Shown in pieces: positions 12,501 through 62,659 of a DNA stretch of 64,000 bases. Below the pieces are notes generated by a model. It made no database searches. It was not told where the DNA came from and saw only the letters and a program-made list of their open reading frames with translations. Within the stretch, counting starts at the first letter, position 1. Each line of letters opens with the position of its first letter. The translations under genes and the position numbers were made by a program. Origin of the DNA: Mobula hypostoma (lineage: Eukaryota); NCBI RefSeq assembly GCF_963921235.1, contig NC_086102.1, positions 137,020,001 through 137,084,000 on the forward strand, in the 5' to 3' direction.

Positions 12501-14967
12501 TTGGTCAATGAGGAATGAGGTGAAACTCAGATGGTGAATCTTTGGAATTCTCTACCCTGGAAAGCTGGGGAGCCTCATTCGCAAGTTCATCCAAAACAGG
12601 GTTGATGAATTGTTCGATTTTAAGGGAATCAGGGCTTACAGTGTTACGACAGGAAAATTGCTTTGAGGTAGAAGCTAATATTCAATATCCTCGCTGTCCT
12701 CTTTCACCCATTGTCTAGAACAGGCCTAGAATGAAGTAAGATCCTCAGACTCTATTCTGACAGATCAATCTAGGTTTCATATCTTATTGAGAAACCGGAT
12801 ATCAAATCCCAAATTAAACTTACGTTTGAAGATATTTCCAGTGAAGTTTCCTCTGAACTGCTTTTCACCTGTATAAAAACATGTACATGTATATCATTAG
12901 TACAAGGTATATTTAGTAAATCTAAAACAAATAATAGACCAGAATGTTGAATTATCAACGGAGAGTTATTAATCCTAACATTTCTGAATGATAATTCAAT
13001 GAATTAGTGTTAGATTGCAGAAGCTTCAATAAAAATTATCTCTATACTACACTGATGTACAAAAAAAATGTCAGGAGCAGAATGAATGGATATTCCTATA
13101 ACAGTTGCTGTAGGCATCATTGCCATCTGTTTTATTGAATCCATGGAAGGATTGGTACTTCATGAATCTCAGTGATGAGAGTTTGTCAGACACTTCTCCT
13201 GTAGTCCTGTTCTGCTGATGCTCAGCTCATCTTCAGTAGAGAACAAACCCATCATGCACTGAAATCTAATATTAGGATTCCCTCCCTACACATCAGACAA
13301 CAAAAAAAATCTGATAAATTACTGATTAATACTCACATCTGAGGTTTCCTCAAATGATTTTTCTTTTGATTTGCTTTGTGCCTGTAAGATAAAGATACTT
13401 ATTTTCAGATCTTCAGCATACATAAACAATGAAATCTTCAGTAAACAATCTTCTGTTAGAAATTCCATTGCCCTGAATTGTATGAATGCAGTTACCTCGA
13501 TACTGTTTTCATTTGATTCTGTTGAGTCACTCTCGCTGTCAACCGTCGTCAGACCGTCACACTCCACATCAACGTCAGCTACCTTATCAGCAAAAAATTC
13601 CACATGGCTTTTGCAGAACCCTTTCTCCTGTTAGAATGAAGCAGAATGTAAGGAAATTATTTATGATTCCAAGCAAGACACAAAATCAAAATGATTATGC
13701 TCTAACTTAATTCTTAGCCTTTACTTTGATATAACCACATATGTATGGCCATTTCTATCAAACAGGTTGTAATTAAAGTTTGTATTTTGTTGCTAATACA
13801 TACACGGACTTGCATGATCTAAGATATAACTCTGGACTCACCGCAATGTTTTTATGGCGGAAAGAGCAACTGGGATCATCAAATTCCTGTCCAGAATTCT
13901 TGGAGCAGACAGTTTCTTTCACGGAGAATGTTAAATCCACACTGTAGGACAGTTTACCCGTACGATATGTCTTAAGAAAGGGAAAAGGATAATTGGTGAA
14001 TTATTACTTCTGGTGTTTTTCCACTGGTCTGATAAAACTCAGAGTTACAGAGGCTTTAATTCCAGCAAATGGTTACAGTGGTAGCGTCTGAGCAGTCAAC
14101 CAAAATGAACAGGAGGATGACTTTGCCCAGTGGTAAAACTGTCACTTAAACCATCACAATAGGGATACTCAATTTTCATGAATCCATAATTATTGGAGGA
14201 AATTAACTAACAAATTTGGGAAACTTTCAGTGACTTCAAAATCAAAGATTGGCTGAACTTCCAAACTTAATTCCAAAGCTTTGGTCCAATCAAAGTTGCA
14301 CAACTCAAACACTGATGGAGAGTTAAAAAGCTGACCACTCTGTACACAATATAATATTCAGCTCCCGTTGAAGACTTAGATTCCATCTTATCTTAACATT
14401 TATCTCATACATTGAATTATGCAGCTTGAGGCCACTCAGCCCTTCAGGCATATACTGGCTCCCAGCTGACCCATCCCATCAATCCCACTCTCCCTCTCGT
14501 CAAATCCCCATAATGTTGCAACTTACTCTCTCTATCACAAACATCATCTCTCCTTTGATTTGTTTTTTGGTGTTAAACTACTCTTAGGGTAAGTTTAAGT
14601 AGACAGTTACCCTGCACTCAGACACATCAATAGTTTGTGAAACACAATCAGCCAAAGGCACACTTACATTTGTCACGCCTCTCCTGGAGATACCACAGAG
14701 GTTGGTGATCTCGGTGATTTCATTCAGCTTTATCACTGAGGCTCTCAGAGCTTCCTTGGTGCTTGGCACTCCTGTAGAGAGAGAGGGGAAGTCATACAAT
14801 ATGCATTCGAACAAACCTCTGTGAATTCTTCTCACACCTGGGTGAAATGTCGTTGCTTGAAGCTCAGTACCAACAACTTTCTGCTCTCTGATTTCCCACT
14901 CTCCCCAGTACTTACCTGAGCAGTAGAGGATCTGCACTGCAGCAATGGCAAGCAGGAAAGTTTTCAT
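9523..14967 (-). CDS. spp2: SPP2/SPP24-like secreted cystatin-domain phosphoprotein, copy A (10 coding exons, 224 aa, five 15-aa Ser/Glu mini-exon repeats)
   Basis: Hand-spliced exons, all AG/GT bounded and in frame: 14967-14916 MKTFLLAIAAVQILYCSG (signal peptide, phase 1); 14771-14668 VPSTKEALRASVIKLNEITEITNLCGISRRGVTN; 13970-13842 TYRTGKLSYSVDLTFSVKETVCSKNSGQEFDDPSCSFRHKNIA; 13627-13496 EKGFCKSHVEFFADKVADVDVECDGLTTVDSESDSTESNENSIE; 13381-13337 AQSKSKEKSFEETSD; 12868-12824 VKSSSEETSLEISSN; 12005-11961 EKDKSTESSLEDSAD; 11315-11271 VESKSNETSVEESSD; 9722-9678 MKSKSTELSSEEPSN; 9555-9523 EQNEDLRSHH*. From memory it resembles SPP24 (ALxASVxKxN, LxFSxxETxC, C-x17-C loop, then Ser-rich). The symbol denotes the family; orthology is untested. 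Confidence 0.88.
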
Positions 14968-15055
14968 TCTGGTTTGTGTGGAATCAGCTAGTTTCTCACA
15001 GTGAAGGAACTGCTTCTCTCTCTCTCGATCTGCCTTTACCACGCTGCCTTCAGTC

Positions 15056-15061
15056 TTTATA
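15056..15061 (-). promoter_or_regulatory. TATA box, copy A
   Basis: GGATATAAAG about 90 nt upstream of the ATG; conserved in all three copies. Confidence 0.75.
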
Positions 15062-15994: not shown

Positions 15995-16789
15995 GGTAGT
16001 TAGTATAAAAGTGAAGAAAGTGATGGAGCAAGATTTGACAGCATAACACACTATAGCCTGGTTTATTCATTATTAGAAATATTTCATTCCTTTATTTTTT
16101 TTTGCTTTTTTTTATAGATCTTTACAAAGACAGTGCAATGAATGTTCTAATTGCTGCACATGAAGAAATTTCTCTAAATGTCACATCTGACATTCGGAAA
16201 GCAAAATACCCTCTGTTGCTGGAAATCTGAACTTCACTCTCACTCTCTTGGTGACAGGTTTAAATCAATGGCCCTCACAACCTGCTCTTTGTTGTTAGGA
16301 ATTGATCATTTCCATTGACCACAACAAATTTCTGAATTGTTCTATTAACTTTCTATTAAATTAATCCTTTTCTGTTCCAATGAAAATTGTCTTGAAATCT
16401 AAAATTTCCTAACTGCAGTCTCATATCATCCCTAATATGCCAGAAATTCTATCCTATCCACTTGCTGTGGGTTCAACATCCTTTCTCCCTCTCTGGCAGG
16501 TTGATTCCTTCGTATTGGCAGAGCCCAACACAGGATGTTATCAGAGCCAGTGACAGGTGGCTAGTTCAACAGGTTTATTGCTGTTAAGACCATTTCTTGG
16601 CATCATCAATCCAGCGCTTATGTGGTCACCAACCAGAAGGCAACATCAAGGGTGAAGTCTGAGAGAAGAACACAGACCCCAAAGAAACATCATTCTGCTC
16701 CATCATTAAGTTCTGATGTAAGGGCATTCTGTAACATTCAGCTACGATTGGCTTGTGTTCCACTGTGCATCTCTTAGCCCTGCTGTGAT

Positions 16790-17230
16790 TTTCCAGGCAT
16801 CGTTCCAGTAATGAAAACCTTAAATCATTCATCTTCAATGGGTTGAACTTGGAGCAAACATGTCAGTGTTTGGTTAATCTGATCTGTAAACAGAATGGTG
16901 ATTACACACAGTTGTGTATTTCTGAGCAGCACTGACCATTGAGATGACCCACTGTGCCGTGTGTGGGAGTACCAGTTCACTGATGCAGGGGCAGTGTGCA
17001 CACATTGGCCACGTCCAACATGGTTTTGTGGGAAGCTCATGAACTGATGGTCTCTTTATCTACCAGCCAAGTTTGTGTGGGATAAATTCCCCATTTCACT
17101 CTCAGGAATCCAGTTTGCTGATAAATAAATTAACAAACATGCTGATAAACAGTAATCAAGGATTATGAGTAATCCAGCACCCAGAAACTGAAGCATTCAC
17201 ACTGGAACAGGCAACAAGATGCTGCAAAGC
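16790..17230. promoter_or_regulatory. Conserved upstream block (candidate enhancer), copy A
   Basis: About 2 kb upstream of the TATA box; high identity to the paralogous blocks. Confidence 0.5.
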
Positions 17231-18940
17231 CCCAGTGCAGTCTCTGAGACAGTGATATAAGAATGTGTCGTTCTGTTCCATTCACTTAGTGTCAACAATA
17301 GCAATAGTGCAGTAAACACCTAATGTGTTGCTGGCCCTGTGTTCACATTTACCCCAGTATTAAAGCTCATAGATTTGAATCACAGGTCCTTGGGATAGTT
17401 TTGACCGTGGTCATACATTGATCTTCAATGTGCGGGGCATTTGCTCAAACCACTTTATGGCATTTTTGGGATTAGGAGATATGGCAAAATATTAAGTATT
17501 AACGTCAGCAGCTAACTGCTGCCACCAAGCTCCAGATCTGAATATGGACTGTAGATTAAACTTAAAATGCAGCTGTGGCCAATGGGTTTCAAAGAGCTGT
17601 GAACTGCAATTAATTAAAAAACCAGACTATGCTGATTTAACATTCATTTGGGTGTCTGTAGTGTGGGTACAAAGAAGGATGTGTGAACGATATATGCAAT
17701 TCAAAGGAAGTATTGTAGATACATCATAAATATAGAATTGTCCTTTGATCTTTAGCATATAAAATATCATGAAATGTTGGGTCGAGTAAATCTCTTCCTC
17801 CGAAAGGGTATCAACATGATGCCCTCTGTGTTTCATTTTGTTGAATAAAGACACTACTTCATATCCACCAGCTGCCTCTACACACATTGAGTTCATATTA
17901 TGGTAGCATTACTACAGATTAGTGTCTGAATAAAGGATCAACCCATTACAAAGATTTCGCTGCAATATGTTCTGATGACAGAAGCTAGTTAGTGACCCGA
18001 ATATGGGTACTTCACCCAGGGCTTTGTTTTTGGACTGTGTGTTGTTGACGGTGGTCATGAAAGCTGTGGTCAGGGTTCCTGGCTCCTGGGCTGCATACTG
18101 GTGTCAGAGTTCATGTGGGAGGAGAAGGGGAGAGTTAAAGAAAAAACACTAAATCAATTAGTGGAGGTAAACAGCTCAGGAAAAGGAAACAAGTCAACAT
18201 CTGCCTGGAAAACATGTGCCAATATTTGCATGAAAATATCAATCATATTTTGAACAGAATGAGGCTCTCATCTTTTCATCATAAAGACTTGCAAAATGTT
18301 TTAAAAGTAGGAAAATCTGAATCCAGTTATCTTGTGAGAAATCTATTTATCCCCAGTTTTTACAGGGCAGTACATTTAAGTTAACCCCTTTCATGCCAAA
18401 ATTCATTAGTTGTAGCCGGTGTTTCATCTTCATGTTGCTCATTGAAGCAAAGTTTCAGTCAATAACAAGGCCATAAGACCATAAGATATAGGAGCAGAAG
18501 TAGGCCATTTACCCCACTGAGTCTGCTCCATCATTCAATCATGAGCTGATCCAATTCTTCCAGTCATCCCCACTCCCCTGCCTTCTCCCCATACTCTTTG
18601 ATGCCCCGGCTAATCAAGAACCTATCTATCTCTGCCTTAAATACAAACGTTTGTACATCCAATGACTTGGCCTCCACAGCTGCTTGTGGCAACAAATTCC
18701 ACAGATTTACCACACTCTGACTAAAGTAATTTCTCTGCATCTCAGTTCTAAAAGGATGTCCTTCAATCCTGAAGTTGTGCACTCTTGTCCTAGAATCCCC
18801 TACCATGGGAAATAAATTTGCCATATCTAATCTGTTCAGGCCTTTTAACATTTGGAATTTTCTATGAGATCACTCCTCATTCTCCTGAACTCCAGAGAAT
18901 ACAGCTCAAGAGCTGCTAGACTTTCCTCATACAGTAACCC

Positions 18941-21900: not shown

Positions 21901-23121
21901 AGAAAATCTGCCCCCAGCAGTGGTTGGGCCACGGCGGCCAGTGTGAAGTCCCACGTGAACCGGCTGGAGCTGAACTGTAGCCGCACCATGCGGGTGCCGT
22001 AGGTTCGTATTGTGCTGCCATTAGCGGCCCTCAGGGTGGGTCCCGGTTCTCTGTTGCAGGTGTCGTAACTCATTGGAGGTAAGACGCTGATCTCCGCTCC
22101 GGTGTCGACCAAAAAGCGGCGTCCCGACTGCTTGTCCCAGACGTACAGGAGGCTGTCCTGAAGGCCAGCCGCCGTAGCGATCGGCAGCGGCTGGGCCTTG
22201 GTGTTTCCCGGGAATTTGCAGGGCTGTCTGCAGCGGCGGGCCTCCGTGCCCCACCGCTGGTGGTAGAAACACCATTGTTCGTTGGGCTCCTCACTCCCGT
22301 CGCCGGGTTTTGTAGGCTCTGCTGCCGGGCCCGGTCTGGTCTGTTGTTGGGCACGCGGCTTGATGATCTGTGCGACGGATGCCCCTCTATCTTTCCTGGC
22401 ATTCCACAGCACATCTGCTTGGGCCGCCACCTCCCGGGGTTTGCTGAAATCTGCGTCGGACAGCAGCAGGCATATGTCCTCGGGCAGTTGCTCTAGGAAC
22501 GCCTGCTCAAACATGAGGCAGGGTTTGTGTCCTTCAGCCAGGGCCAGCATCTCGTTCATTAATGCTGACGGCCGCCTGTCTCCCAAACCATCCAGGTGCA
22601 TTAAGCAGCGTGCTCGTTCGCGCCGTGAGAGTCCGAAAGTCCTTATGAGCAGGGCTTTGAATGCTGTGTATTTGCCGTCCTCCGGGGGCGACTGTATAAA
22701 CTCCTCAACTTGTGCAGCAGTCTCCTGGTCGAGGGAGCTCAGCACGTAGTAGTAGCGGGTGGAATCCGAGGTTATCTGCCGAATGTGGAATTGTGCTTCT
22801 GCTTGTTCGAACCATAAATGGGGTCGCAGCGTCCAAAAGCTTGGCAGTTTTAACGAAACTGCGTGAACAGATGCAGCATCGGTCATCTCTGGTCCAAATA
22901 TCGTTTGGGCCGTCAGGGTCACCAATTGTAGCGATGTGCTACACACAGCGCTAGAATAACCACGCGGAGTCGGTGAGTTGGAGTTGCGATGAAAGAGGTT
23001 TATTCAAACTTCACGGCCCGCTTTAAAGCCTTCCCGTTCCCGCCCTTTTTGCTGCCGGCCCTCTGCCTGCGCGCGCTGTTTCGTGAGCCGGTTCGTGGGT
23101 GTCAGAAAGTGGGTCGCCACA
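18941..23121 (-). mobile_element. Full-length Ty3/Gypsy LTR retrotransposon
   Basis: 195-bp LTRs at 18941-19135 and 22927-23121 (TG...CA, 6 transitions apart); 4-bp TSD ACCC; PBS TGGTGACCCTGACG (tRNA-Trp-like); G-rich PPT at 19136-19150. Confidence 0.96.
19116..22886 (-). pseudogene. Gypsy gag-pol (Gag-PR-RT-RNaseH-IN) with a single premature stop at 21300-21302
   Basis: LVDTGA protease, YLDD RT, TVDAS RNaseH, HHCC and DDE integrase, PYEGPF. FEFL*MPFG corresponds to the canonical FEFLRMPFG. Confidence 0.93.
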
Positions 23122-28946: not shown

Positions 28947-31900
28947 TTAGTGCTGGGCTCTCGAGTCCTCATTTTGTTCCTGGAATGGAAAGATGAACAA
29001 ATTTGTAATTTTCAGCTCGATGGAGCTCACTCTGATGTCAATATTTTGTCATTAGTTTTAATAATGATCACATCAGTCACAAAGCTTCAGTTTATACTTA
29101 CATTTGAACGTTCCTCCAGTGATAATTCCGTTGATTTGCTTTTCATCTGTTTTATGAGATAAAATCAGATTTGCACATCAGTGATAGATCCACATCAGAA
29201 ACTTCACAATCAATCTGAATTTCAGCAAAATATTAACGTAATGGGACTATAAGATTGAGTAATACAAAGTATGCCATTATCTTGGAGAAGATGAAAACAA
29301 GAATTATGAAGATATTACCAGTACTGGAGGGTTTGTGTTATAAGGAGAGGCTGGATAGGTGAGTTGATTCCCTGGAGTGCAAGAAAGTATGGGAAGATAA
29401 AATTATGGGGTGAAAAGATATGGCAAATAGCCAAAGTAATTTTTTTTAGAGTAGAGGAGTCTAAAATGAGAAAACATAGGTTTAAATTGCAAGGGAAAAA
29501 ATTCAAAAGTGATATGACGGGCAACTATTTCAAACAGAGATGGTGCGTTTATGGAATGAACAGTCAGTAGAATCGGTAGAGACAGGTTGAATTGTGACCT
29601 TTAAAATGCATTTGGACAGTTCCATAGATAAGAAAGATTTTTAAGTGATATGCCCTGGCTTAGTACTGGCTTGCATAACACACTTGAGGACCTTGAGGAC
29701 CTGAGGAGAGTAAGGTACCGGTGACCCCTGTTTCCATCCATGGGGTCAGTGTGGACATGGTGGAGGATTACAAATACCTGGGGATACGAATTGACAATAA
29801 ACTGGACTGGTCAAGGAACACTGAGGCTGTCTGCAAGAAGGGTCAGAGCCGTCTCTATTTCATAGAAGACTGAGGTCCTTTAACATCTGTCGGACGATGC
29901 TGAGGATGTTCTACGAGTCTGCGGTGGCCAATGCTATCATGTTTGCTGTTGTGTGCTGGGGCAGCAGGCTGAGGGTGGCAGACACCAACAGAATCAATAA
30001 ACTCATCCATAAGGCCAGTGATGTTGTGGGGATGGAACTGGACTCTCTCACGGTGATGTCTGAAAAGAGGATGCTGTCTAAGTTGCATGCCATCTTGGAC
30101 AATGTCTCCCATCCACTACATAATGTACTGGGTGGGCACAGGAGTACATTCAGCCAGAGATTCATTCCACCAAGATGCAGCACAGAGCATCATAGGAAGT
30201 CATTCCTGCCTGTGGCCATCAAACTTTACAACTCCTCCCTTGGAGGGTCAGACACCCTGAGCCAATAGGCTGGTCCTGGACTTATTTCATAATTTACTGG
30301 CATAATTTACATACTACTATTTAACTATTTATGGTTTTATTACTATTTATTATTTATGGTGCAACTTTAACGAAAACCAATTTGCCCCGGGAGCAATACA
30401 GTATGACTATGACTATGACTATGACACAGACAGCTGGGACACAACTTCCGTGTTCAACCTGACCAACGAAGGTCTCAGTGCTGATATCTACACCATACAC
30501 TTCAGCTCATAGTTATAATCAATTAAATGTGAGAAATGTTATGGATCCCCCATTCATGAAACTACCAGAAATATCAATCCACAGACCATGATTGTCCCCA
30601 GGAGAGAGTGTCCTTCTAAATTCTATTTCAAAATTTAGAGAAGAACAAACTCACACTCAGGCTAATGATGGGCATCCTCAGGACATGCACAGAGAATTTG
30701 TGCATTAATATGCTATTCTCTCCCTGATCTCTGTAGTCATTTAACTATGTTTGCCCAAATTAGGTTTTATCTGTATATTATGGTTGAAAATCAATAGATG
30801 AAATTTCTTAGACTTACATCAGAAGACTCCTCGACCGATGTCTCATTTGACTTGCTCTCTACCTGCATGAAAAGATCAATATTTATATGCTCAGCATGTT
30901 AATTAATGAAAGTTTGTGAAGTAACCTGAGAACAAAACTAGAAATATCTTGATTTTTAATTTATTACTGCAGTGGAGAAGTCCTCGCCAGGAGAATTACA
31001 TTCCGTATAATGATCAACATAGCCGGGAAAATATGAGGTGTGGGGTGTCTGGAGATGAATTGGGGAAAATGTCACTCTCACCCAATTAATTGGCATTGCA
31101 TGTATTGAAGCTGCTCTGCACCATCACTTGGACTCTGTAATTGGTGAGTGTTAGAGACTTTGCCCTCACTCCTAGCACCCAATCCAGCTCACTTTATCCT
31201 TGAGGGGAAGCAAACTCATTCTCTATATTGGAACCCCTCAGTCAAACTTCCCAACAGGAATCAAACAACATATTCCCTTTCTCAATGCACTGACCTAACG
31301 TTAGTGGAGCAGATTCAATGGGAAAAATGGCATAATTCTTCTCCTTTGTCTCGTATCTTATGGTCTAAATTGCCCTCTCTCCTTGTATTCTGACAAGGCC
31401 GAATTGAATATGTTTAACGTATTTACTTAGCGACGAGGTCAAAAAGATCATCTGAATTTTTTTAGTTATACTCACATCAGCTGAGTCTTCAAGAGATGTC
31501 TCTTTTGATTTGTCCTTTTCCTGTATGAAAATAATATTTATATGTTTAGTACAAGACAGTGAAGAATTTTGATGATATATAAACTGAAAAATCACCAGTT
31601 TGCACAATTATTAAATATTGAAATATAATGTAGACTTCGTTCACTCTGGGCATTTCAGCAGCAAATGCAGCAGGCCATTAGGAAAGCAGATTATTTTTAT
31701 AGCAAGAGGACTTGAAAAGAAGAGTACTACAATTGTATCGAGCCCAGTGAGGGTTGTGTAATTCTGGTTGCTTATCTGAAGAAGGATATGCTTGAGACAG
31801 AGGATATAGCAAAGTTATACTAGTATAGTGCCCATGAACGTGGATCTGTCACATGAGGAGAGATTAAGTATGATAGACTATTCATTACAGATAGGAAGAA

Positions 31901-34900
31901 TGAGATGTGATTGCATAACCATAAGCAAAATTGTGAGAGGGTTTGATTGGATATCGGGGAAGGGTTTTCACCTGTCTAAGGAGATGAGAGCTTGGCTCAT
32001 AGTCTCAATATAAGAGCTTGGTCAATGAGGAATGAGGTGAAACTCAGATGGTGAATCTTTGGAATTTACTACCCCCAAAGAGCTGTGGAGGCTCAATTGA
32101 AAGTTCATTCAAAACAGAGATTGGTGAATTGTAGAATATTAAGGGAATCAAGGCTTACAGTTTTATTATAGGAAAATGGTTTGAGGTGGGCACTAGCTAA
32201 TATTCAATATTCTCTCTCAACCCCGCTGTCTGGAACAGGGCAAGAATTAATTAAGATCCCTAGACTCTATTCTGACAGATCAATCTAGGTTTCACATCTT
32301 ATTGAGAAACTGAAGATATCAACTCCCAAATTAGACTTATATTTGAAAACAATTCCAGTGAAGTTTCTTCTGATTTGCTTTTTGCCTATATAAAATATGT
32401 ACATTTATAGCATTAGTACGAGGTATATTTAGTAAATCTAAAGCACTATCACCGAATAATAGACCAGAATGCTGAATTATGAATGGAGCTATTAATCCTG
32501 ACATTTCTGAATGATAATCCCATGAACTAGCGTTAGATTGCAGAAGCTTCAATAAAAATTCTCTCTATACTACACTGATACTCAAAAAAAATGTCAGGAA
32601 CAGATTGAATGGATATTCTGACAATAGGTGAAACAGGCATCGTTACCATTTGTTTTATTGAATCCATGGAAGGATTGGTACTTAATGACTCTCAGTGGTG
32701 AGAGTTTGTCATACACTTCTCTTGTAGTTCTCTTCTGCCGATGCTCAGTTCATCTTCAACAGAGAACAAACTCCTCATGCACTGAAACCTAATATTATGA
32801 TCCCCTCCCTACACATCAGACTGGGACAAGACCACAGACCACAACATCATAATACATAGGAGCAGTATTAGGCCATCTAGCCTATCGAGTGTGCTCCGCC
32901 ATTCAATCATGGCTGATCTTTTTTTCTATCTCCTTCTCAACCCCAGTTCCCGGCCTTCTCCCCGTACCCTTTGATGCCACATCCAATCAATAACCTATCA
33001 ATCTCTGCCTTAAATACACCCAACGACCTGGCCTCCACAGCTGCAAGTGGCAACAAATTCCACAATTTCACCACACTTTGGCTAAAGAAATTTTTCCTCA
33101 TCTGCTTTGAAAGGGCGCCCCTCTATCCTGAGGCTGTGCACTCTTGTCCTAGACTCTCCCACCAAGGGAGCCATCCTTTCCACATCTTCTCTGTCTAAGC
33201 TTTTCAATATTCGAAAGGTTTCAATGAGATCCTCCTTCATCCTTCTGAATTCCAGCGACTGCTGGTATAACCCTTTCATTCCTGGAATCATCCTTGTGAA
33301 CCTCCTCTGGACCCTCTCCAATGCCAGCACATCTTTTTTAAGATGAGGGGCCCAAAACCTTTCACAATCGTCAAGGTGAGGCCTCACCAGTGCCTAATAA
33401 AGCCTCAGCATCAAAACCTTGCTCCTTTATTCTAAACCTCTTGAAATGAATGCTAACATGGCATTGGCCTTCCTCACCACCAACTCAACCTGCAAGTTAA
33501 CCTTAAGAGTGGACTCCCAAGGACTCCCAAGTCCCTCTGCAACTCATATTCCTGGATTTTCTCCTCGTTTAGAAAATAGCCCACACATTTATTTCTACTA
33601 CCAAAGTGCATGACCATGCATTTTCCAACATTGTATTTCATTTGCCACTTTCTTGCCCATTCTCCTAATCTGTCTAAGTCCTTCTGCTTCCTACCTGTTT
33701 CCTCAACATTACCTGCCCCCCACTAATCTTTCTATCATCTGCAAACTTGTCAACAAAGCCATCTATTTCATCATCTAAATCATTTATATACAGCATAAAA
33801 AGAAATAGTCCCAACACCGACCTCTGCGGAACACCACTAGTCACTGGCAGCCAACCAGAAAAGGACCCTTTTATTCCCACTTGCAGCCTCCTTCTAATCA
33901 GCCAATGCTCTAACCATGTTTGTAACTTTCCTGTAGTACCATGGGCTCTTAATTTGGTAAGCAGCCTCATGTGTGGCACCTTGTCAAAGACCTTCTGAAA
34001 GTCCGAATGCACAAAATTCCCTTTATCTATCCTACTTGTAATCTCTTCAAAGAATTCTAACAGGTTCACCAGGCAGGATTTTCCATGAAGGAAACCATGC
34101 TGACTTTATATTATCTTGTCCTGTGTCACCAAGTACTCCACCTCGTCCTTAACAACTAACTCTAACATCTTCCCAACCACTGAGATCAATCTAACTGGTC
34201 TATACTTTCCTTTCTGCTGCTTTCCTCCTTTCTTAAAGAGTGGAATAACATTTGCAATTTTCCAGTCCTCTGGCACCATGCCAGAGTCCAATAATTTTTG
34301 AAAGATCATTTCTAATGCCACCACAATCTCTAACGCAACCTCTTTCAGAACCCTAGGGTGCAGTTCATCTGGTCCAGGTGACTTATGTACCTTTAGGTTT
34401 TCCAGCTTTTTGAGCACCTTCTCTCTTGTAACAGTAACTGCACCCACTTCTCTTCCTTCACACACTACATTATCAGGCATACTGCTGGTGTCTTCCACAG
34501 TAAAGACTGACGCAAAATACTCATTCAGTTCAGCAGCCATCTCCTTGTTCCCCGTTATTATTTCTCCTGCCTCATTTTCTAGCAATCCTGTATCCATTCT
34601 CATTTCTCCTTTATTTTTAACTCGAAAAATCTTTTACTGTCCACTTTGATATTACTTGCTAGCTTGCTTTCATATTTCATCTTTTCCCTTCTAATGATTT
34701 TTATAGTTGCTTTCTGTAAGTTTTTAAAAACTTCCCAATCCTCTATCTTCTGACTAATTTTTGCTTTGTTGTATGCCCTTTCATTTGCTTTTATAATAGC
34801 TTTGAACTCCCATGTCAGCTACGGTTATACTATTTTACAATGTGCGTATTTCTTCATTTTTGGAATACACATGTCCTGCACCTTCCTCATTTTTCCCAGA

Positions 34901-37364
34901 AACGCACACCATTGTGATTCTACTGACATCTCTGCCAGCAGCTCCTTCCAATTTACTTTTGCCAACTTCTCTCTCATACCACTATAATTTCCCTTACTCC
35001 ACTGAAATACTGCTACATCACACTTCACTTTCTCATTATCAAATTTCAAGTTGAACACAATCATATTGTGATCACTGGTTCCTAAGGGTTCTTTTATATT
35101 AACCTCCCTACTCGCCTCCAGTTCATTACATAACACCCAATCCAGTATAGCTGATCCCCTAGGAGGCTCAACAACAAACTGCTCTAAAAAGCTATCTCTT
35201 AGGCATTCAACAGACTCACTCCCCTGAGATCCATTACTAACCTGATTTTCCCAATCAACCTGTATGTCAAAATCTTCCATGACTACCATAACATGCTGTC
35301 TCACCCACTATTCCTAATGGAGAACTTAAAATTTCATTGCGAAGAATTTTAATCATTTCATCGTGAACAATTGAGTGCAACAAGAAAAAAATCTGATAAA
35401 TTACTGATTAATACTCACATCTGAGGTTCCTTCAAGTGATGTTTCTTTTGATTTGGGTTGCGCCTGTAAGATAAAGATATTTATTTTTAGATCTTCAGCA
35501 TACATAAACAATGAAATGTTCAGTAAAGGATCTTCTGTTAGAAATTCCATTGCCCTGAATTGTATGAATGCAGTTACCTCAATACTGTTTTCATTTGTTT
35601 CTGTTGAGTCACTCTCGCTGTCAGCTGTCGTCAGACCGTCACACTCCACTTCAACGTCAGCTACCTTATCAGCAAAAAATTCTACATGGCTTTTGCAAAA
35701 CCCTTTCTCCTGTTAGAATGAAACATAATGTAAGGAAATTATTCATGATTCCAAGCAAGACAATAAATCAACATGATTATGATCTAACTCAATTCTTAGC
35801 CTTTCCTTTATTATAACTACATATGTATGTATGGTCATTTCTATGAAATGGGTTGTAATTAAAGCCTGTATTTTGATGTTAAAACATACAAGGACTTGCA
35901 TGATCTAATATAACTCTGGACTCACCGCAATGTTTTTATGGCGGAAGGAGCAGCTGGGATCATCAAATTCCTGTCCAGAATTCTTGGAGCAGACAGTTTC
36001 TTTCACGGAAAACGTTAAAACCATGCTGTAGGACAGTTTACCCGTACGATATGTCTTAAGAAAGGAAAAGAGATCATTGGTGAATTGTTATGTCTGGTAT
36101 TCTTCTACGGGTCTGAGAAAATGCAGAGTTACAGGGGGTCTACTTCCAGCCGATGGTTTCACTGGTCATGTCTGAGTTTTTTTTTTGTACGTCACATCCG
36201 GAGTTTCTCCGGTTAGCAGACAATTTCCATCCACGTCTCTCTGACGTAGCGGGGAACCGCGTACGAGGCAAGTTACAGCAATGGTTTGCCATTGCCTTCT
36301 GCCGGGTGAGTTTCCAAAGAGATCACCAGCTCCTAACCCAGCGCGGATAGAAAGCGTGCAGAGGAGCCGGCTGGAGCTGGATTCGAACTCAGAACCTTCC
36401 GTCCTGAAGTCCGATGCTGATGCCACTACGCCACTAGCCAGGTCATGCCTGAGTAATCAACCAAAATGGATAAGAGAATTACTTTGCCCAATGGTAAAAC
36501 TGTCACTTAAACCATCATGATAGGGATATTCAGTTTGCATGAATTCGTAATTATTGAAGGAAATTAACTGACAAATTTGAGAAAATTTTCAGTGACTTGC
36601 AAATCAAAGACTGGTAGAACATCCAACCTTAATTCTGAAACTCTGGTCCAATCAAATTTCCACAACTCAAACACTGATTGAGAACTAAATTGCTGAACAC
36701 TCTGTACATAATATGAAATTCAGCTCCTGTTGAATACCTAGATTCTATCTTATCTTAAAATGTATCTCACAATTAGTTTTATGCAGTTTGTGGCCAGTCA
36801 GCCCTTCAGGCTTATACTGGCTCCCAGCTGACCAATCCCATCAATCCCACTCTCCCTCTCATCAAATCCCCATAATGTTGCAATTTATTCTCCTTATCAC
36901 AAAACATTATCTCTCCTTCCAGCATCTGCAGAATTCCTCGTGTTTACTCTCCTTTGATCTGTTTTTTGCTGTTAAACTATTCTTAGGGTAGGTTTAAGTA
37001 GACAATTACCCTGCACTCAGACATATCCATAGTTTGTGAAACACAATTAGCCAAAGGCACACTTACATTTGCTACGCCTCTCCTGGTGATACCACAGAGG
37101 TTGGTGATCTCGGTGATTTCATTCAGCTTTATTACTGAAGCTCTCAGAGCTTCCTTGGTGCTTGGCACTCCTGCAGAGAGAGAGGGGAAGTCATACAAGG
37201 TATCCCAAAAAATCTCTGTGAATTCTTCTCACACCTGGGTGAAATGTTGCTGATTGAACTTCAGTACAAACAATTATCTGCTCTCTGATTTTCCTTTCTC
37301 CCCAATACTTACCTGAGCAGTAGAGGATCTGCACAGCAGTGATGGCAAGCAAGAAAGTTTTCAT
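28947..37364 (-). CDS. spp2: SPP2/SPP24-like secreted phosphoprotein, copy B (9 usable coding exons, ~209 aa)
   Basis: Exons 37364-37313 MKTFLLAITAVQILYCSG; 37170-37067; 36054-35926 TYRTGKLSYSMVLTFSVKETVCSKNSGQEFDDPSCSFRHKNIA; 35709-35578; 35463-35419 AQPKSKETSLEGTSD; 31520-31476 EKDKSKETSLEDSAD; 30862-30818 VESKSNETSVEESSD; 29146-29102 MKSKSTELSLEERSN; 28979-28947 EQNEDSRAQH*. All open with canonical sites. The exon-6 homolog has a dead donor. Confidence 0.86.
29700..30425 (+). mobile_element. Rex1/Babar-like LINE 3' fragment in an intron of copy B
   Basis: YKYLG..IDNKLDW and MLRMFYESAVANAIMFAVVCWG...SFLPVAIKLYN motifs; (GACTAT)n tail. Confidence 0.8.
32341..32385 (-). pseudogene. Splice-dead mini-exon 6 of copy B (AKSKSEETSLELFSN)
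   Basis: Homologous to 12868-12824. The TAG acceptor is intact but the donor reads ATAAGT instead of GTAAGT at 32340. Confidence 0.8.
32829..35290 (-). mobile_element. CR1-like LINE in intron 5 of copy B
   Basis: Endonuclease/RT fragments (SDHNMI, KSPGPDELHPRVLKE, SGVPQRSVLG, KFADD); empty site ctgggacacatgctg at about 60928 in copy C. Confidence 0.88.
36178..36440 (-). mobile_element. tRNA-derived SINE with RTE-like 3' end in intron 2 of copy B
   Basis: A box TGGCGTAGTGG, B box GAGTTCGAATCC, poly-A tail, 14-bp TSD ggtcatg(t/c)ctgagt at 36164 and 36441. Confidence 0.8.
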
Positions 37365-39258: not shown

Positions 39259-39308
<50 letters not shown>

Positions 39309-51200: not shown

Positions 51201-51894
51201 GAAATTTTTTCAAGAGTTAAATAAATCTGTGAAGAAAATTTCTTTGGAAAGGTAAAATGTCAAGAATATCATTGGAAAAACTGACATGTAAATTTAGGTT
51301 AGGAGGGTTACAACTTCCAAACTTTAAAAATTACTATAAAGCAAATCAACTTAGATTTATTGCATCTTTTTTCGATGATCAAAAACCAGCATGGATTAAA
51401 ATAGAACTAGACAAGATAGGAGAAAATAAACCTGAAGATTTTATATATAAATAGGAATCTAAATGGATACGGGAAAAGAAAGAATCTCCTATATTAACAC
51501 ACTTGATTGATCTATGGAATAAGATAAATGTTGATAAGGAAACACAGAAATCTCTATTAGCAAGGAGACTTTTGTTTCAAAACAGACTTATTCCTTTTAC
51601 AATGGACAATCAACTTTTATATAATTGGTACCAAAAAGGGATTAAATTTATAGGAGATTGTTTTGAGCGAGGTATATTGATGTCATTTGAACAATTAAAG
51701 GATAAATATAATATATCTAATAATACTTTCTTTTGCTACTTTCAGTTAAGGGCTTACTTAATAGGTAAGCTGGGTCAAACAATGTTTTTGCCAAAAGCTA
51801 ATGAAATTGAAATTTTAATTCAAAAAGGGAAAATTAAAAAAATTATTTCTTGTATGTATAATTTGATTCAAGAACAGACAATTAAACAAGGAAC

Positions 51895-57266: not shown

Positions 57267-60200
57267 TCAGTGCAGGGCTCTAGAGTCCTCATTTTGTTCC
57301 TGGAATGGAAAGATGAACAGATTTGTAATTTTCAGCTCAACTGAGCTCACTCTAACATCAATGTTCTGTCATTAATTTTAATGATGATCACATCAGACAC
57401 AAAGCTTTAGTTTATACTTACGTTTGAAGGCTCCTCCAGTGATATTTCTGTTGACTTGCTTTTCATCTGTTTTACGAGAAGAAATTTTGCATTTTAGAAC
57501 GTTTCCAGATGCACAGTTTAATGAGATTTAGTTTCTAAATTATTAAGTAGAACCACTTTAAAATCAGAATTGCACAGCACTGAGAGATTCATATCATACA
57601 ATCAGTCTGAATTTCAGCAAAATATTAACATAATAAGACTCTAAGATAGTTTATTACAAAGGACGTCATCATCTTGGAGAAGGTGCCAACAAAAATTGTA
57701 AGTGTATTACTTGTACTGCAGGGGTTGTGTTATAAGGAGAGGCTGTGTAGGTGAGGTGTTGTTTCCATGGAGTGCAAGAAAGTAGGGGAAGACATAAAAG
57801 AGGTTTACAAAATTATGAGGTGAATAGATAAGGCAAATAGCCATATTTTCCACAGGGGAAGTCTAAAATTAGAGAGTATAATTTTAAATTGAAAGGGGAA
57901 AGATTCAGAAGTGATCTGAGGGGCAACTTTTTCAAGCAGAGATGGTGGGTTTATGGAATGAACTGCCAGTCAAATTGGTGGAGTTGGGTACATATATGAC
58001 ATTTAAAATGCATTTGGATGATTCCATGAATAGGAACATTTTTAAGAGATGTAGGCAAAATGGGATTACATTACGTAAGCAACTTGGTCAGCACAGATGA
58101 ATTGGTTGAGAGGACCTGTTTCTGCATTGTACAACTCTATGACTCTATTAATCTAAGACAGATGATTTATTCCTTCAGTGGGTCATGATGTGCTGACATC
58201 GGTTCTTTACGATTGTTATAGCTGGAGGTGGTAATAGGGATAAGCTCCCTCTACCTATTAAATGCCACCAATGGTGTGTATCTCAAATAGTTCTGGCAAC
58301 CAAGTCAAGATCCTGGCCTTCATGCGTGCCTTAGCTACTAAGCCTGGTTGAACAGTTTCTACTGACGGGAGAAAGTGCGAAGGTGGTTTACTGGTGCCTT
58401 GAAATAAGTCCTTTGGGCAGATGGGGCACCTCAGCCATGCTTTCCTTCTTGGAGAAGGAAATCTCTGATCTCAACCTCCGCTGCTTTGTGGTTATAGCGG
58501 CTCACATGATAGGGTGCGGGAATAAACCACAAGGAAAACTTTGGAGCAGCAGTCCCTAAGGAAATCCTATATTGATTTCAAAGCTGACTGGCAACTCCTC
58601 TGACACCAGTGGTGCCAATCTGTAACAGTCTCTGCCGTCCTTTTGATTCATCAACTGCGTGAGGAGGATGAGCAACAGTTTGCTCTCCATATCATTCTGC
58701 CCTGCCTTGTGCACTGGCTTGCTTAACAAATGCAATGGATTCTCCTTTCATGAAAACACTAGTTATGTCTTCCCACAAACCAGGATTGACCCCAGGTGAG
58801 AGTGCCCTTTCAAATTCTATTTCAAACTAAAGTGAAGAACAAACTCACACTCAGGGTGAAGTTGGTCATCCTCAGGAAATGAATAGAGAATACTTTAGAG
58901 AATTTGTGCATTAATGTGCTATCCTCTCCCTGCTCTAGGTAGTCATTTAATCATGTTTGCCCAACTATGGTTTCACCATGTATTATGATTGAAAATCAAT
59001 AGATAAAAATTCCATTGATTAGACTTACATTGGAAGACTCCTCATTTGATGTCTCTTTTGATTTGCTCTCTACCTACATGAAAAGAATCAAAATTTATAT
59101 GCTTAGCATGTTAATCAATGAAAATTTGTCAAGTAACCTTTGAACAAAACCTTTAATGATTTAATTACATGTAAACCTACATTTATCATGATTTGTGCTT
59201 CAGTATTGCAGTGGAGAAGTGTTCCTCAGAACAATTACATTCTGTACAATGATCAACATCGCCTGGATAATGTGAGGTGTGGGGGTTAGTATATTATTTG
59301 GGTAACAATATCACTCACACTCAATTAATTGGCATTGGATATATTGAAGCTGCTCTGCACCAACTCTTGGTCTCTGTAATTGGTGATTGTTACAGACATC
59401 ACCCTCATGTCTAGTACCCAATCTTCTTGATATCCAGCTCACTTTATCCTTGAGGGAAAGCAAACTCATTCTCTGTATTGGAACCCCTCAGTCAAACTTC
59501 CCCATAGGAATCAAACATCACAATACCTTTCCCAATGCACCAACGTATCTTATATCTTATTCTCTAAATGGCCCACTCTCTTTCTATTCTGACATAGTTG
59601 AATCTAAGATGTTTAACATATTTACATAGCGTCAAGGTCAAAAAGATCATCTGATTTTTTTTTTCCATTTATACTTACATCAGCTGAATCCTCAAGAGAT
59701 GTCTCATTTGATTTGCCTTTTTCCTGTATGGAAATAATATTTATATGTTTACCACAGGACACTGATGAATTTTGAAAATACATGAACTGAAAAATTCCTG
59801 CTTGGACAAGTATTAAATATTGAATTATCATGGAGTTTTTGTTCTCTCTGGGCATTTCAGCAACAAATGCAGCAGGCCATTGGGAAGGCATATTGACTTT
59901 ATTGCAGGAGGATTTGAAAAGAGGGATACTAAAATTGTAGTGATCCCTGTATTGTGTAGTTTTGGTCTGCTCTCTGAAAATGGATCTGCATGAGGTAGTG
60001 GATACAGCAATGGTATATTTTCCTGGAAAGATGCATATGCCACATAAGAAGAGGATGAATTGTGTTGGATAATTTGGATAATCATTACAGGTTAAAACAA
60101 TGAGGGGTTATTGCCTGACCATGAGCAAAATTATGAGAGGGTTTGATTGGTAATGTAGGTATGTTTCTGCCAGTCGAAGCATTGAGAGCTTGGCTCATGT

Positions 60201-62659
60201 CTCAAACTAGGTGCTTGTCCAATGAGGAATGAGGTGAAACTCAAATGGTGAATCTTTGAAATTCACTGTCCCCAGAGAGCTGTGAAGGCTCAATCATGAG
60301 TTCATTCAAAACAGGGATTGGTGGATTGTTGGATATTAAGGGAAACAAGACTTACAGTTTTACTATAGAAAAATGGTTTGAGGTGGGATCTAGCGAATAT
60401 TCAATATTCTCTGTCTTCTCACCCCCACTGTCTGGAACAGGCCAAGAATGAATTAAGATTCTCATACTCTATTCTGACAGATCAATCTAGGTTTCACATC
60501 TTATTGAGAAATTGAAGATACCAGAAAACATTCCCAGCAATTAACAGACCAGAATACTGAATTACGAATGAAGAGCTATTAATCATGACATTTCGGAATG
60601 ATGTTCCCATTACTTAGCATTAGATTGCAGGGGCTTCAATAAAAAGACTACCCCCAATACTACATTGATATTCAAAAAAAGTGCTTGGCTACAGTAAACA
60701 CCTGGAGCAGAGTGAATAGATGTTCCTACAATAGATGGCACAGGCACCATGCCATCTGCTTTATTGAATCCATGGAAGGAATGGTACTTCGTGAATCTCA
60801 GTGATGAGAGTTTGTCAGACACTTCTCCTGTAGTCCTGTTCTGCTGATGCTCAGCTCATCTTCAGCAGAGAACAAACTCATCATGCACTGAAATCTAATA
60901 TTAGAATCCCCTCCTTACACATCAGACTGGGACACATGCTGTCTCATCCACTATTCCTAATGGAGAGCTTAACATTTCATTGCAAACAATTATAATCACC
61001 TCATCATGAACAATTGAGATCAACAAGATAAAATCTGATAAATTACTGATTAATACTCACATTTGAGGTTTCCTCAGGCGATGTTTCTTTTGATTTGCTT
61101 TGTCCCTGTAAGATAAAGATATTTATTTTTAGATCTTCAGCATACATAAACAATGAAATGTTCGGTAAAGGATCTTATGCTAGAAATTCCATTGTCCTGA
61201 ATTGTATGAATGCAGTTACCTCAATACTGTTTTCACTTGTTTCTGTTGAGTCACTCTCGCTGTCAACTGTCGACAGACCGTCACACTCCACTTCGACATC
61301 AGCTACCTTATCAGCAAGAAATTCCACATGGCTTTTGCAAAACCCTTTCTCCTGTTGGAATGAAGCATAATGCATGGAAATCATTCCTTATTGCAAGCAA
61401 GACACAAAACCAACATGATTATGATCTAACTCAACCAATGTGACCTAGCCTTTGCTTTGATATAACTGCATATGTATGGTCATTTACATGAAAAAGGTTG
61501 TAATTAAAGCCCGTGTTTTGATGCTACGACACACACGGACTTGCATGATCTAAGATATAACTCTGGACTCACCGCAATGTTTTTAGGGCGGAAGAAACAG
61601 CTGGGATCATCAAATTCCTGTCCAGAATTCTTGGAGCAGATAGTTTCTTTCACGGAGAATGTTAAATCTACATTGTACGACAGTTTACCTGTACGATATG
61701 TCTGAAGAAAGGAAACAAGATTATTGGTGAACTATTATGTCTGGTGTTCTTACAGTGATTGATAAAACTTAGAGTTACACAGGGCTTTATTTCCAGCAGA
61801 TGATAACATGGATAGTGTCTGAGCAATCAACCAAAATGGACAATGCATTTAATTTTCCCAATGATAAGATTACCATTTAAACCATCATGAATAGGGATAC
61901 ATAGCTGCATAGTTTTCAGGAACGCTTAATTATTGGAGGTAATTAGTAAACAAAATTGGGAAAGCATTCAAATCAAAGACTGGTTGAACTTCCAAACTTA
62001 TTTCCAAAGCTTTGGTCTAATCAAAGTACCACAACTGAAATACTGATGGAGAGTTAAATAGCAGACCACTCTGTACATAATATAATAGTTAGCTCCTGTC
62101 GAACACTTAAGACTTCATCTTATCTTAAAATATATCTCTTACTTAGAATTATGCAGTTTGAGGCCACTCAGCCCTTCAGGCCTATACTGGCTCCCAACAA
62201 ACCAATCCAACCAATCCCATTCCCCCTTCGTCAAATCCCCATGATGTAGCAACTTATTTTCACTATCACAAACATATCTCTCCGTTAATTTGTTTTTTGC
62301 TGTTAAACTACTCAGACTTATCCATAGTTTGTGAAACACAATCAGCCAAAGGCACACTTACATTTGTCACGCCTCTCCTGGTGATACCACAGAGGTTGGT
62401 GATCTCCGTGATTTCATTCAGCTTTATAACTGAAGCTCTCAGAGCTTCCTTGGTGCTTGGCACTCCTGCAGAAAGAGAGGGAAAGTCATACAAGGCATCC
62501 CAACAAAACTCTGTGAATTCTTCTCACACCTGGGTGAAATATCGCTGACTGAAGCTCAGTACCAACAACTTTCTGCTCTCTGATTTTCCGCTCTCCCCAG
62601 TACTTACCTGAGCAGTAGAGGATCTGCACTGCAAAGATGGAAAGCAGGAACGTTTTCAT
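57267..62659 (-). CDS. spp2: SPP2/SPP24-like secreted phosphoprotein, copy C (9 coding exons, ~209 aa)
   Basis: Exons 62659-62608 MKTFLLSIFAVQILYCSG; 62465-62362; 61701-61573 TYRTGKLSYNVDLTFSVKETICSKNSGQEFDDPSCFFRPKNIA; 61351-61220; 61105-61061 GQSKSKETSPEETSN; 59723-59679 EKGKSNETSLEDSAD; 59073-59029 VESKSKETSNEESSN; 57466-57422 MKSKSTEISLEEPSN; 57299-57267 EQNEDSRALH*. The exon-6 homolog is deleted near 60520-60545. Confidence 0.86.

What the first reader, a model, noticed from the sequence alone, without database searches (positions are those of the whole stretch)
12824..60545. One phospho-module in three states: intact with SSSEE (A), GT>AT splice-dead (B), deleted (C)
Seen: mini-exon 6 is canonical at 12868-12824. 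Its donor is ATAAGT at 32340. It is removed with flanks retained near 60520-60545. Because exons are symmetric phase 0, loss keeps the frame (224 versus 209 aa). Inference: paralogs tune phosphate load by exon gain and loss, as caseins do by exon skipping. The only perfect SSSEE is specific to copy A.
Basis: partly seen in the sequence, partly recalled or inferred. Interest (0 to 1): 0.75.

Follow-up and report, generated by a model that had tools for sequence, protein, structure and literature searches.

The report
Devil-ray Spp2 phospho-exon: kept, disabled, deleted
Three neighbouring copies of a devil-ray cartilage-mineralisation gene (spp2.3) carry the same 45-base phosphorylation exon intact, with a dead splice signal, or deleted; this is ordinary module loss in a gene family already published, of the kind known from milk caseins.

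Summary
The window is Mobula hypostoma chromosome 6. It carries three tandem minus-strand spp2.3 (secreted phosphoprotein 24-like) genes, each with 10 coding exons: signal peptide, cystatin-like domain, five 45-nt phase-0 mini-exons and a short last exon.

- **Copy A:** mini-exon 6 is canonical (12868-12824, VKSSSEETSLEISSN). The protein equals XP_062906091.1, 224 aa.
- **Copy B:** the exon has an open frame (32385-32341), but its donor reads ATAAGT at 32340. Contigs from the probable source sample agree with the assembly. The sister species (M. birostris) has G there, so the change is recent.
- **Copy C:** two deletions removed the acceptor, most of the exon and the donor. A 14-nt relic remains at 60537-60524.

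Skipping keeps the frame (209 aa). It lowers the S-x-E site count from 17 in A to 12 in B and C.

The exon is ancient in rays and skates. In a stingray it is annotated as a cassette exon, with isoforms that differ only by it. The losses are therefore derived and independent.

Not shown: what copy B's RNA looks like. No usable RNA run was found for this species, and NCBI models B as a truncated read-through. Adaptive "tuning" is also unshown; the sister species' copy seems to carry a 1-nt deletion in the same exon, which points to relaxed constraint. The family and these loci were published in 2026, without exon-level analysis. The scan had already followed up this family in neighbouring windows.

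The parts
9523..14967 (-). Copy A gene (LOC134347648, XP_062906091.1, 224 aa). Ten coding exons: e1 14967-14916, e2 14771-14668, e3 13970-13842, e4 13627-13496, e5 13381-13337, e6 12868-12824, e7 12005-11961, e8 11315-11271, e9 9722-9678, e10 9555-9523.
   Evidence: Exon model built from splice sites. Its translation is identical to P0059. Pfam Spp-24 PF07448, 41 bits against a cut-off of 26.
12824..12868 (-). Mini-exon 6 of copy A, intact: AG acceptor, GTAAGT donor, encodes VKSSSEETSLEISSN with the only SSSEE.
28947..37364 (-). Copy B gene (LOC134348762). All exons open and all splice sites canonical except the e6 donor. Exons: e1 37364-37313, e2 37170-37067, e3 36054-35926, e4 35709-35578, e5 35463-35419, e6 32385-32341, e7 31520-31476, e8 30862-30818, e9 29146-29102, e10 28979-28947.
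   Evidence: NCBI's 182-aa model XP_062908634.1 equals e1-e6 plus read-through into intron 6.
32341..32385 (-). Mini-exon 6 of copy B: open frame AKSKSEETSLELFSN, AG acceptor.
   Evidence: It is close to the stingray module AKSKSEETSLELLAN.
32335..32340 (-). Mutated donor ATAAGT of copy B mini-exon 6. The +1 base is A here and G in the sister species.
   Evidence: table 3: at 32340 the plus strand is T; source-sample contigs agree; X24 (sister species) reads C, which is G on the coding strand.
32822..35377 (-). LINE-type retroelement insertion of about 2.5 kb in intron 5 of copy B only, starting about 41 nt downstream of the e5 donor. It lengthens the intron upstream of e6 from 468 nt (in A) to 3033 nt.
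   Evidence: A position 13298 aligns to both B 32821 and B 35378. (reverse-transcriptase-like ORFs 34106-34603 and 34825-35304 on the minus strand). (contig depth 10^4-10^6, so highly repeated).
57267..62659 (-). Copy C gene (LOC134348763). Nine coding exons, all open with canonical sites, 209 aa if spliced as in A. Exons: e1 62659-62608, e2 62465-62362, e3 61701-61573, e4 61351-61220, e5 61105-61061, e7 59723-59679, e8 59073-59029, e9 57466-57422, e10 57299-57267.
   Evidence: NCBI's 153-aa model XP_062908635.1 equals e1-e4 plus read-through into intron 4.
60524..60537 (-). 14-nt relic of mini-exon 6 in copy C (CTGGGAATGTTTTC) between two deletions. Acceptor, 5' two thirds of the exon and donor are gone.
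   Evidence: (three-way alignment).

Best explanation
The window holds three tandem paralogues of the cartilaginous-fish spp2.3 gene. Each encodes a signal peptide, an Spp-24 cystatin-like domain and an acidic tail rich in serine. The tail is assembled from five homologous 45-nt phase-0 mini-exons, each carrying two or three S-x-E (Fam20C-type) sites.

Mini-exon 6 is an ancestral batoid module that behaves as a dispensable cassette.
- Copy A keeps it, and in Mobula has sharpened it to SSSEE.
- Copy C lost it through two small deletions after C split from the A/B lineage.
- Copy B lost its donor by a G>A transition at +1 in the M. hypostoma lineage, after the split from M. birostris.

The most likely consequence in B is constitutive in-frame skipping (e5 joined to e7, 209 aa, 12 S-x-E sites instead of 14), as happens with donor +1 mutations in casein genes. 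The pattern is best read as birth-and-death turnover of phospho-modules under weak constraint in a large tandem family, not as demonstrated adaptive tuning.

Shown: the gene models, the three DNA states, the direction and recency of the B mutation, the ancestry of the exon, and annotated isoforms with and without the exon in a stingray. Inferred: skipping in B, phosphorylation of the sites, and weak constraint.
For: **Gene models and exact match to NCBI proteins:**

**Family identity:** Pfam PF07448 above cut-off. The loci are listed as M. hypostoma chr6 spp2 genes in supplementary file 9 of PMC13188829. S-x-E and Fam20C background comes from the same paper.

**Three states:**

**Recency and direction of the B mutation:** the sister-species DNA contig has G at 32340, and the source-sample contig agrees with the assembly and spans the site without a break.

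**Exon ancestry:** e6-like modules (xxSxSEETSLE...) sit in second position in Hypanus, Hemitrygon, Amblyraja, Leucoraja and Rhinoraja proteins.

**Cassette behaviour:** H. akajei isoforms X2 and X3 (P0025, P0024) are identical except for this exon. P0024 is not on record as a separate gene.

**Orthology:** each of A, B and C pairs with its own M. birostris orthologue (support 99/96, 95/81, 100/97). A and B lie in one Mobula clade that excludes C. The losses in B and C are therefore independent.

**No rescue by a cryptic donor:** the in-frame GT at 32310 scores -11.2 against 10.3-14.6 for real donors. The GT at 32295 lies beyond the in-frame stop.

**Precedent for skipping:** PMC12470106.

**Rest of gene B not visibly decaying:** all other exons and splice sites are intact. 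Amino-acid divergence from M. birostris is about the same in A, B and C (5-6 changes each).
Against: - There is no RNA evidence for M. hypostoma. The laid RNA-like run X3 covers only the retroelement, not the exons.
- NCBI's model for B includes e6 and reads through the dead donor (182 aa). I cannot tell whether transcript evidence supports that model.
- The source-sample contigs are probably the data from which the assembly was made. The A at +1 could therefore be an allele of one individual rather than fixed.
- The evidence that the sister species splices e6 in is indirect. It rests on one contig depth (19.7) shared across e5, e6, e7 and e8, on species-specific variants, and on piece ends that coincide with exon ends. 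The joints table was swamped by the retroelement.
- The whole-protein tree is dominated by the very conserved cystatin exons and may be blurred by gene conversion. The e6 peptides of A and B each resemble a different stingray gene.
Confidence: 0.55

Rival explanations
1. Adaptive tuning. Selection has set different phosphate loads in the three paralogues by fixing presence or absence of the module. A is specialised as the high-phosphate form carrying SSSEE.
For: S-x-E counts differ: 17 in A against 12 in B and C. SSSEE is found only in A and its M. birostris orthologue among 60 homologues. Module number varies widely in the family. Phosphorylation level is thought to matter for mineralisation control (PMC13188829). 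Casein alleles show that such changes have phenotypic effects.
Against: There is no test of selection and no expression or protein data. The same exon of B carries a different apparent lesion in the sister species (1-nt deletion at 32379), which fits neutral decay better. Amino-acid divergence between the species (about 1.1-1.2% per non-synonymous site) is close to intron divergence (about 1.7%) in all three genes. That suggests generally weak constraint.
Confidence: 0.15
2. Copy B no longer makes a full-length protein in M. hypostoma. The dead donor leads to intron-6 retention, giving either the 182-aa product that NCBI models or nonsense-mediated decay. On this view B is an early pseudogene rather than a shorter isoform.
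For: NCBI's model XP_062908634.1 is exactly e1-e6 plus read-through to a stop 13 codons into the intron. In M. birostris the same exon appears frame-shifted in DNA yet is present in a transcript contig, and the annotated protein there skips e5 and e6. A 2.5-kb retroelement lies 41 nt from the e5 donor.
Against: For 24-45-nt internal casein exons, donor-site mutations give complete skipping (PMC12470106). All other B exons, splice sites and the stop codon are intact. B's protein divergence equals that of A and C. A Gnomon model may simply follow protein homology up to the first invalid splice site.
Confidence: 0.25
3. The A at 32340 is an assembly or sequencing error, or a rare heterozygous allele of the sequenced individual.
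For: Only one individual's data could be examined. Contig depth there is low (6.5). The sister species has G.
Against: Four runs of the probable source sample hold 95-98% of the sampled words of this stretch. A 401-nt contig spans the site with no mismatch and no break at the position, which a heterozygous site would tend to cause. The site is not in a homopolymer.
Confidence: 0.05

Closest known systems
Cartilaginous-fish spp2.3 tandem gene family (Debiais-Thibaud et al. 2026, BMC Biol, PMC13188829)
   Same: These are the same loci. LOC134347648, LOC134348762 and LOC134348763 of M. hypostoma chr6 are in that paper's dataset. Shared features are the signal peptide, the cystatin-like domain with conserved cysteines, and the accumulation of S-x-E motifs in the C-terminus.
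   Different: The paper works at protein level and never mentions exons, splicing, isoforms or pseudogenes. It used the truncated NCBI models for B and C. The mini-exon build of the tail and the three states of exon 6 are not described there.
Allele-specific constitutive exon skipping in alpha-s1 and alpha-s2 casein genes (CSN1S1, CSN1S2)
   Same: Small phase-0 exons encode acidic phospho-serine clusters. Mutations at the donor site, including G>C at +1 of buffalo CSN1S1 intron 6, cause complete in-frame skipping. Skipped exons include phospho-cluster exons such as QMKAGSSSSSE and EYSIGSSSE (PMC12470106).
   Different: Caseins belong to the SCPP family and have no cystatin domain. There the variants are alleles of one gene with RNA and protein proof. 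Here they are fixed or near-fixed differences between tandem paralogues, and the RNA outcome is only predicted.
SCPP family architecture (secretory calcium-binding phosphoproteins)
   Same: Secreted acidic proteins regulated by Fam20C at S-x-E sites, built from short phase-0 exons that duplicate and drop out. That Fam20C regulates Scpp proteins is stated in PMC9122587; the exon architecture is from my own knowledge of the SCPP literature.
   Different: The tail here sits on an SPP2 cystatin scaffold at the spp2 locus, not at the sparcl1/SCPP locus. Exons 1 and 2 join in phase 1. Any resemblance is convergent.
Mammalian SPP2 / Spp-24
   Same: Pfam Spp-24 cystatin-like domain, a signal peptide, and a serine-rich phosphorylated region after the domain.
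   Different: It is a single-copy gene expressed in liver, with an arginine-rich C-terminus and no repeated S-x-E mini-exon tail.

Membership tests
SPP2 / Spp-24 (Pfam PF07448) | Cystatin-like Spp-24 domain scoring above Pfam's gathering threshold | tested here: met
   A 41.0 bits, B 40.6 bits, C 38.6 bits, against a cut-off of 26.
SPP2 / Spp-24 (Pfam PF07448) | [quoted passage not shown] | tested here: met
   C43, C74, C87, C100 and C118 are invariant in 15 batoid sequences, including A, B and C or their orthologues.
SPP2 / Spp-24 (Pfam PF07448) | N-terminal secretion signal | tested here: inconclusive
   The hydrophobic N-terminus MKTFLLAIAAVQILYCSG was seen by inspection. No signal-peptide predictor was available.
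Chondrichthyan spp2 cluster (PMC13188829) | Location in the tandem spp2 cluster of the species | tested here: met
   the three protein accessions are listed consecutively among M. hypostoma chr6 spp2 loci in the paper's supplementary file 9. The window itself shows three tandem copies plus the upstream flank of a fourth.
spp2.3 clade specifically | Placement inside the spp2.3 clade in a rooted family phylogeny | not tested
   My tree contains only close batoid relatives and no spp2.1, spp2.2 or spp2.Like references. The clade name is taken from the paper's description of the multi-copy, S-x-E-rich expansion and from earlier scan notes.
SCPP / casein family | Descent from SPARCL1 at the SCPP locus, with no other globular domain | tested here: not met
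   The proteins carry an Spp-24 cystatin-like domain and lie in the spp2 cluster. It works like an SCPP tail but is not a member.
SCPP / casein family | Coding exons symmetric in phase 0, so exons can be lost or gained in frame | tested here: met
   Exons e3 to e9 all start and end in phase 0. Only the e1/e2 junction is phase 1.
Cassette (alternatively spliced) exon | Transcripts of one gene with and without the exon | tested here: inconclusive
   H. akajei isoforms X2 and X3 differ only by this exon, but these are NCBI predictions. No reads could be examined for A or B of M. hypostoma.

The most novel reading that the evidence does not exclude
Rays carry an SCPP-like modular phospho-tail, built by mini-exon duplication on an SPP2 cystatin scaffold. 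On this reading the inclusion of one cassette module (exon 6) is first regulated by alternative splicing, as in stingrays. It is then hard-wired to 'on' (A, upgraded to a casein-type SSSEE phosphate centre) or 'off' (B by donor loss, C by deletion) in different tandem paralogues. The array would thus encode a graded series of mineral-binding strengths, a convergent replay of casein and SCPP evolution in cartilage.
Probability: 0.2. Interest if true: 0.6.

Novelty: new member of a known kind. Interest (0 to 1): 0.35.

Why it matters
The spp2.3 expansion is the current candidate for how sharks and rays mineralise cartilage. The published work treats the copies as near-equivalent dose amplifiers and relies on automatic protein models.

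This locus shows that the copies differ in the number of phospho-modules. It also shows that two of the three published Mobula models (B and C) are truncated read-throughs, not the likely proteins. Finally, it shows the tail evolving by loss of whole phase-0 mini-exons, as caseins and other SCPPs do.

That yields a concrete hypothesis: module number sets calcium-phosphate binding or inhibition. It also gives a natural allelic series (A with the exon, B and C without) to test it on. The finding does not change what is known about the family's identity or about splicing.

Tried and rejected
- **RNA evidence for copy B in M. hypostoma.** Two run searches (one search failed as busy) found no run recorded as RNA. 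The RNA-like run X3 laid covered only the intronic retroelement.
- **Choice of stretch for read laying.** Including the retroelement swamped the joints and pieces tables (501 joints and about 203,000 pieces not shown). No exon-exon junction is listed directly. The e5-e6-e7-e8 contig of the sister species is inferred from equal contig depth, species-specific variants and distances to piece ends.
- **M. birostris and H. akajei genomic DNA.** Fetching it failed because the files were too large. The state of exon 6 in the C orthologue and in outgroups is known only from protein models.
- **Cryptic donors.** None is credible.
- **AT-AC splicing.** The donor does not match the U12-type consensus. 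The only AC near the e7 acceptor would add 2 nt and shift the frame. This is by inspection and my own knowledge of AT-AC introns.
- **My first model of the 3' end.** I initially ended the gene by read-through of the e9 donor (VSIN, 218 aa). NCBI orthologues showed a 10th exon, and I corrected the model.
- **Rfam.** No RNA family in the window.
- **Findings look-up by place.** Nothing returned.
Full report
**What is in the window**

A self-comparison shows three tandem copies of about 20 kb, 75-90% identical. I call them A (about 9.5-15.0 kb), B (28.9-37.4 kb) and C (57.3-62.7 kb). The upstream flank of a fourth copy lies at the window's start.

All genes are on the minus strand. From splice sites and comparison between the copies I built a 10-exon model:
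- e1 encodes the signal peptide and joins e2 in phase 1.
- e2-e4 encode the cystatin-like domain.
- e5-e9 are five 45-nt mini-exons, all phase 0 at both ends, each encoding about x-K-S-K-S-x-E-T-S-x-E-E-x-S-x.
- e10 encodes EQNEDxRxxH and the stop.

The translation of A is identical to XP_062906091.1 of Mobula hypostoma, 224 aa. A, B and C hit Pfam Spp-24 above threshold.

The three loci (LOC134347648, LOC134348762, LOC134348763, chr6) are listed in supplementary file 9 of Debiais-Thibaud et al. 2026 (PMC13188829). That paper describes the spp2 expansion in cartilaginous fishes, expression of the catshark copies in mineralising cartilage, and the accumulation of S-x-E (Fam20C-type) motifs. It contains no occurrence of 'exon', 'splic', 'isoform', 'pseudogene' or 'casein'.

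**The observation**

- **Copy A:** mini-exon 6 is 12868-12824, flanked by atacag| and |gtaagt. It encodes VKSSSEETSLEISSN.
- **Copy B:** the homologous exon is 32385-32341, with an open frame (AKSKSEETSLELFSN) and an AG acceptor. The donor reads ATAAGT, its first base at 32340. Every other exon and splice site of B is intact.
- **Copy C:** the three-way alignment shows two deletions. One of about 95-104 nt removed the end of intron 5, the acceptor and the 5' two thirds of the exon. One of 23 nt removed the exon's end and the donor. A 14-nt relic (60537-60524) is left, matching B at 12 of 14 positions. I estimate the chance of such a match anywhere in the gap at about 4 in 10,000.

A profile of all mini-exons finds exactly 14 in the window and no other relic. 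S-x-E counts are 17 (A), 12 (B without e6), 14 (B with e6) and 12 (C). SSSEE occurs only in A and its M. birostris orthologue among the 60 batoid homologues retrieved.

**Is the donor base real, and how old is the change?**

I laid contigs of four public runs on 30700-36100.
- A contig of the probable source sample (record 12, 32280-32680) matches the assembly without mismatch and is not broken at the site. This is not independent of the assembly, but it argues against a consensus slip or a heterozygous site.
- DNA contigs of a close relative, run X24, read the complement of G at 32340. That species therefore has the canonical GTAAGT.
- X24 is M. birostris by inference. Its variant at 30845 turns N into K in e8, exactly as in the M. 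birostris protein P0006. Its 31-mer share of about 0.46 corresponds to roughly 2% divergence.

The G>A change thus arose in the M. hypostoma lineage after the two species split. It is not at a CpG.

**What the sister species adds**

The X24 contig also lacks one base of the A-run at 32379-32383, inside exon 6, and has a silent change at 32350 (tables 3 and 4). If real, exon 6 of B is 44 nt in M. birostris and would shift the frame.

Run X1 comes from the same M. birostris individual. It covers the bins that hold e5, e6, e7 and e8 and almost nothing between them. One 340-nt contig of depth 19.7 covers 35511-35418. The same depth figure recurs at the species-specific variants in e6 (32350) and e8 (30845), and the distances to piece ends coincide with exon ends. 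I read this as a spliced transcript contig that includes e6 through the intact donor.

This is indirect. The retroelement in intron 5 flooded the output, so no exon junction is listed. NCBI's M. birostris model of B (P0006, 194 aa) skips both e5 and e6.

**Ancestry of the exon**

- A module of the type xxSxSEETSLE... stands second in the tail in Hypanus, Hemitrygon, Amblyraja, Leucoraja and Rhinoraja proteins.
- B's exon 6 peptide is nearly identical to AKSKSEETSLELLAN of Hypanus and Hemitrygon. A's resembles VRSRSEETSPEISSN of Hypanus.
- Exon 6 is therefore ancestral, and only losses are seen here.
- In a protein tree each of A, B and C pairs with its own M. birostris orthologue. A and B fall in one Mobula clade that excludes C (95/95). 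The losses in B and C are therefore independent events.
- In Hemitrygon akajei two annotated isoforms (P0025, 224 aa; P0024, 209 aa) are identical except for this exon. Only the longer one is on record as a gene product. This suggests the exon is a cassette exon there.
- Annotated Mobula paralogues carry from two to five modules.

**Likely consequence in B**

- No credible in-frame cryptic donor exists. A position weight matrix from the 25 real donors of the three genes scores them 10.3-14.6. The in-frame GT at 32310 scores -11.2, and the GT at 32295 lies beyond an in-frame stop.
- The donor does not fit a U12-type site. The only AC near the e7 acceptor would add two bases (inspection).
- In casein genes, donor mutations next to 24-45-nt phase-0 exons cause complete constitutive skipping, including G>C at +1 (PMC12470106).
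- I therefore expect e5-e7 splicing and a 209-aa protein, with about 60% confidence.
- The rival is intron retention, giving a truncated product or decay. This is what NCBI's 182-aa model amounts to: it equals e1-e6 plus read-through.
- NCBI's 153-aa model of C likewise reads into intron 4, although all of C's splice sites are canonical. The e4 donor is GTAACT in all three copies.

**Selection or drift?**

Nothing here shows adaptive tuning.
- Amino-acid differences between the species number 6, 5 and 5 in A, B and C. That is roughly 1.1-1.2% per non-synonymous site.
- Intron divergence, from the listed X24 contigs, is about 1.7% (34 differences in 2046 nt).
- Constraint therefore looks weak in all three copies, and B's remaining exons are no worse than A's.
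- Two different lesions in the same exon of B in two sister species fit an exon that was already dispensable.
- A 2.5-kb LINE-type insertion, present only in B, starts about 41 nt after the e5 donor. It appears shared with M. birostris, since the gene spans are 8418 and 8336 bp. It may have weakened recognition of the flanking mini-exons. This is speculation.

**Comparison with known systems**

The genes are members of the published spp2 family. The tail works like an SCPP or casein tail (short phase-0 exons, S-x-E sites, loss of exons in frame), but it is not an SCPP: it sits on a cystatin scaffold at the spp2 locus. Elasmobranchs have at least one independently evolved scpp gene (PMC9122587), so the tail is not simply a substitute for a missing family.

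**Verdict**

This is a tidy example of a known evolutionary process in an already published and annotated family, with practical value for correcting two gene models. Interest is modest.

Noticed in passing
window 32379-32383 (copy B exon 6), seen in run X24: The sister species' DNA contig has a 1-nt deletion in the A-run inside exon 6 of its B orthologue. The exon would be 44 nt and frame-shifting there, although its donor is intact and a transcript contig seems to include it.
   Followed up: partly
window 61220-61351 and 32341-32385; NCBI XP_062908635.1 and XP_062908634.1: The public protein models of copies C (153 aa) and B (182 aa) are read-throughs into introns 4 and 6. Full 209-aa models with canonical splice sites exist for both. 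The 2026 family paper used the truncated models in its alignment.
   Followed up: yes
residue 51 of A, B and C (exon 2; window about 14671, 37070, 62365): All three M. hypostoma / M. birostris orthologue pairs differ at the same residue, T versus A: A has T/A, B has A/T, C has T/A. This suggests gene conversion between paralogues or a shared polymorphism.
   Followed up: no
window 9663-9722, 29087-29146, 57407-57466: The donor of mini-exon 9 (GTAAGTATAAACTGA/TAA) carries an in-frame stop four codons in. An unspliced transcript would therefore end in ...VSIN. One M. birostris model (P0015) ends with the similar ISIN read-through. All mini-exon donors share gta/gagtataaa-like flanks, so the duplication unit included intron ends.
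   Followed up: partly
window 19116-22946, minus strand: A GC-rich (51-58%) LTR-type retrotransposon lies between copies B and A. It has two long open frames (548 and 727 aa) with protease, reverse-transcriptase and integrase-like motifs.
   Followed up: no
window 47208-51994, plus strand: An AT-rich (30-32% GC) LINE lies between copies C and B. It has an open ORF1 (346 aa) and a long ORF2 (850 aa, with a further 163-aa frame). It may be a young element.
   Followed up: no
window 4051-4206: A run of 156 N (gap or mask). I left it untouched.
   Followed up: no
window 1-2612: This stretch matches the regions 1.3-2.5 kb upstream of A and B (16231-17451, 39560-40924). It is the upstream flank of a fourth gene copy whose body lies before the window, probably LOC134347647.
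   Followed up: partly
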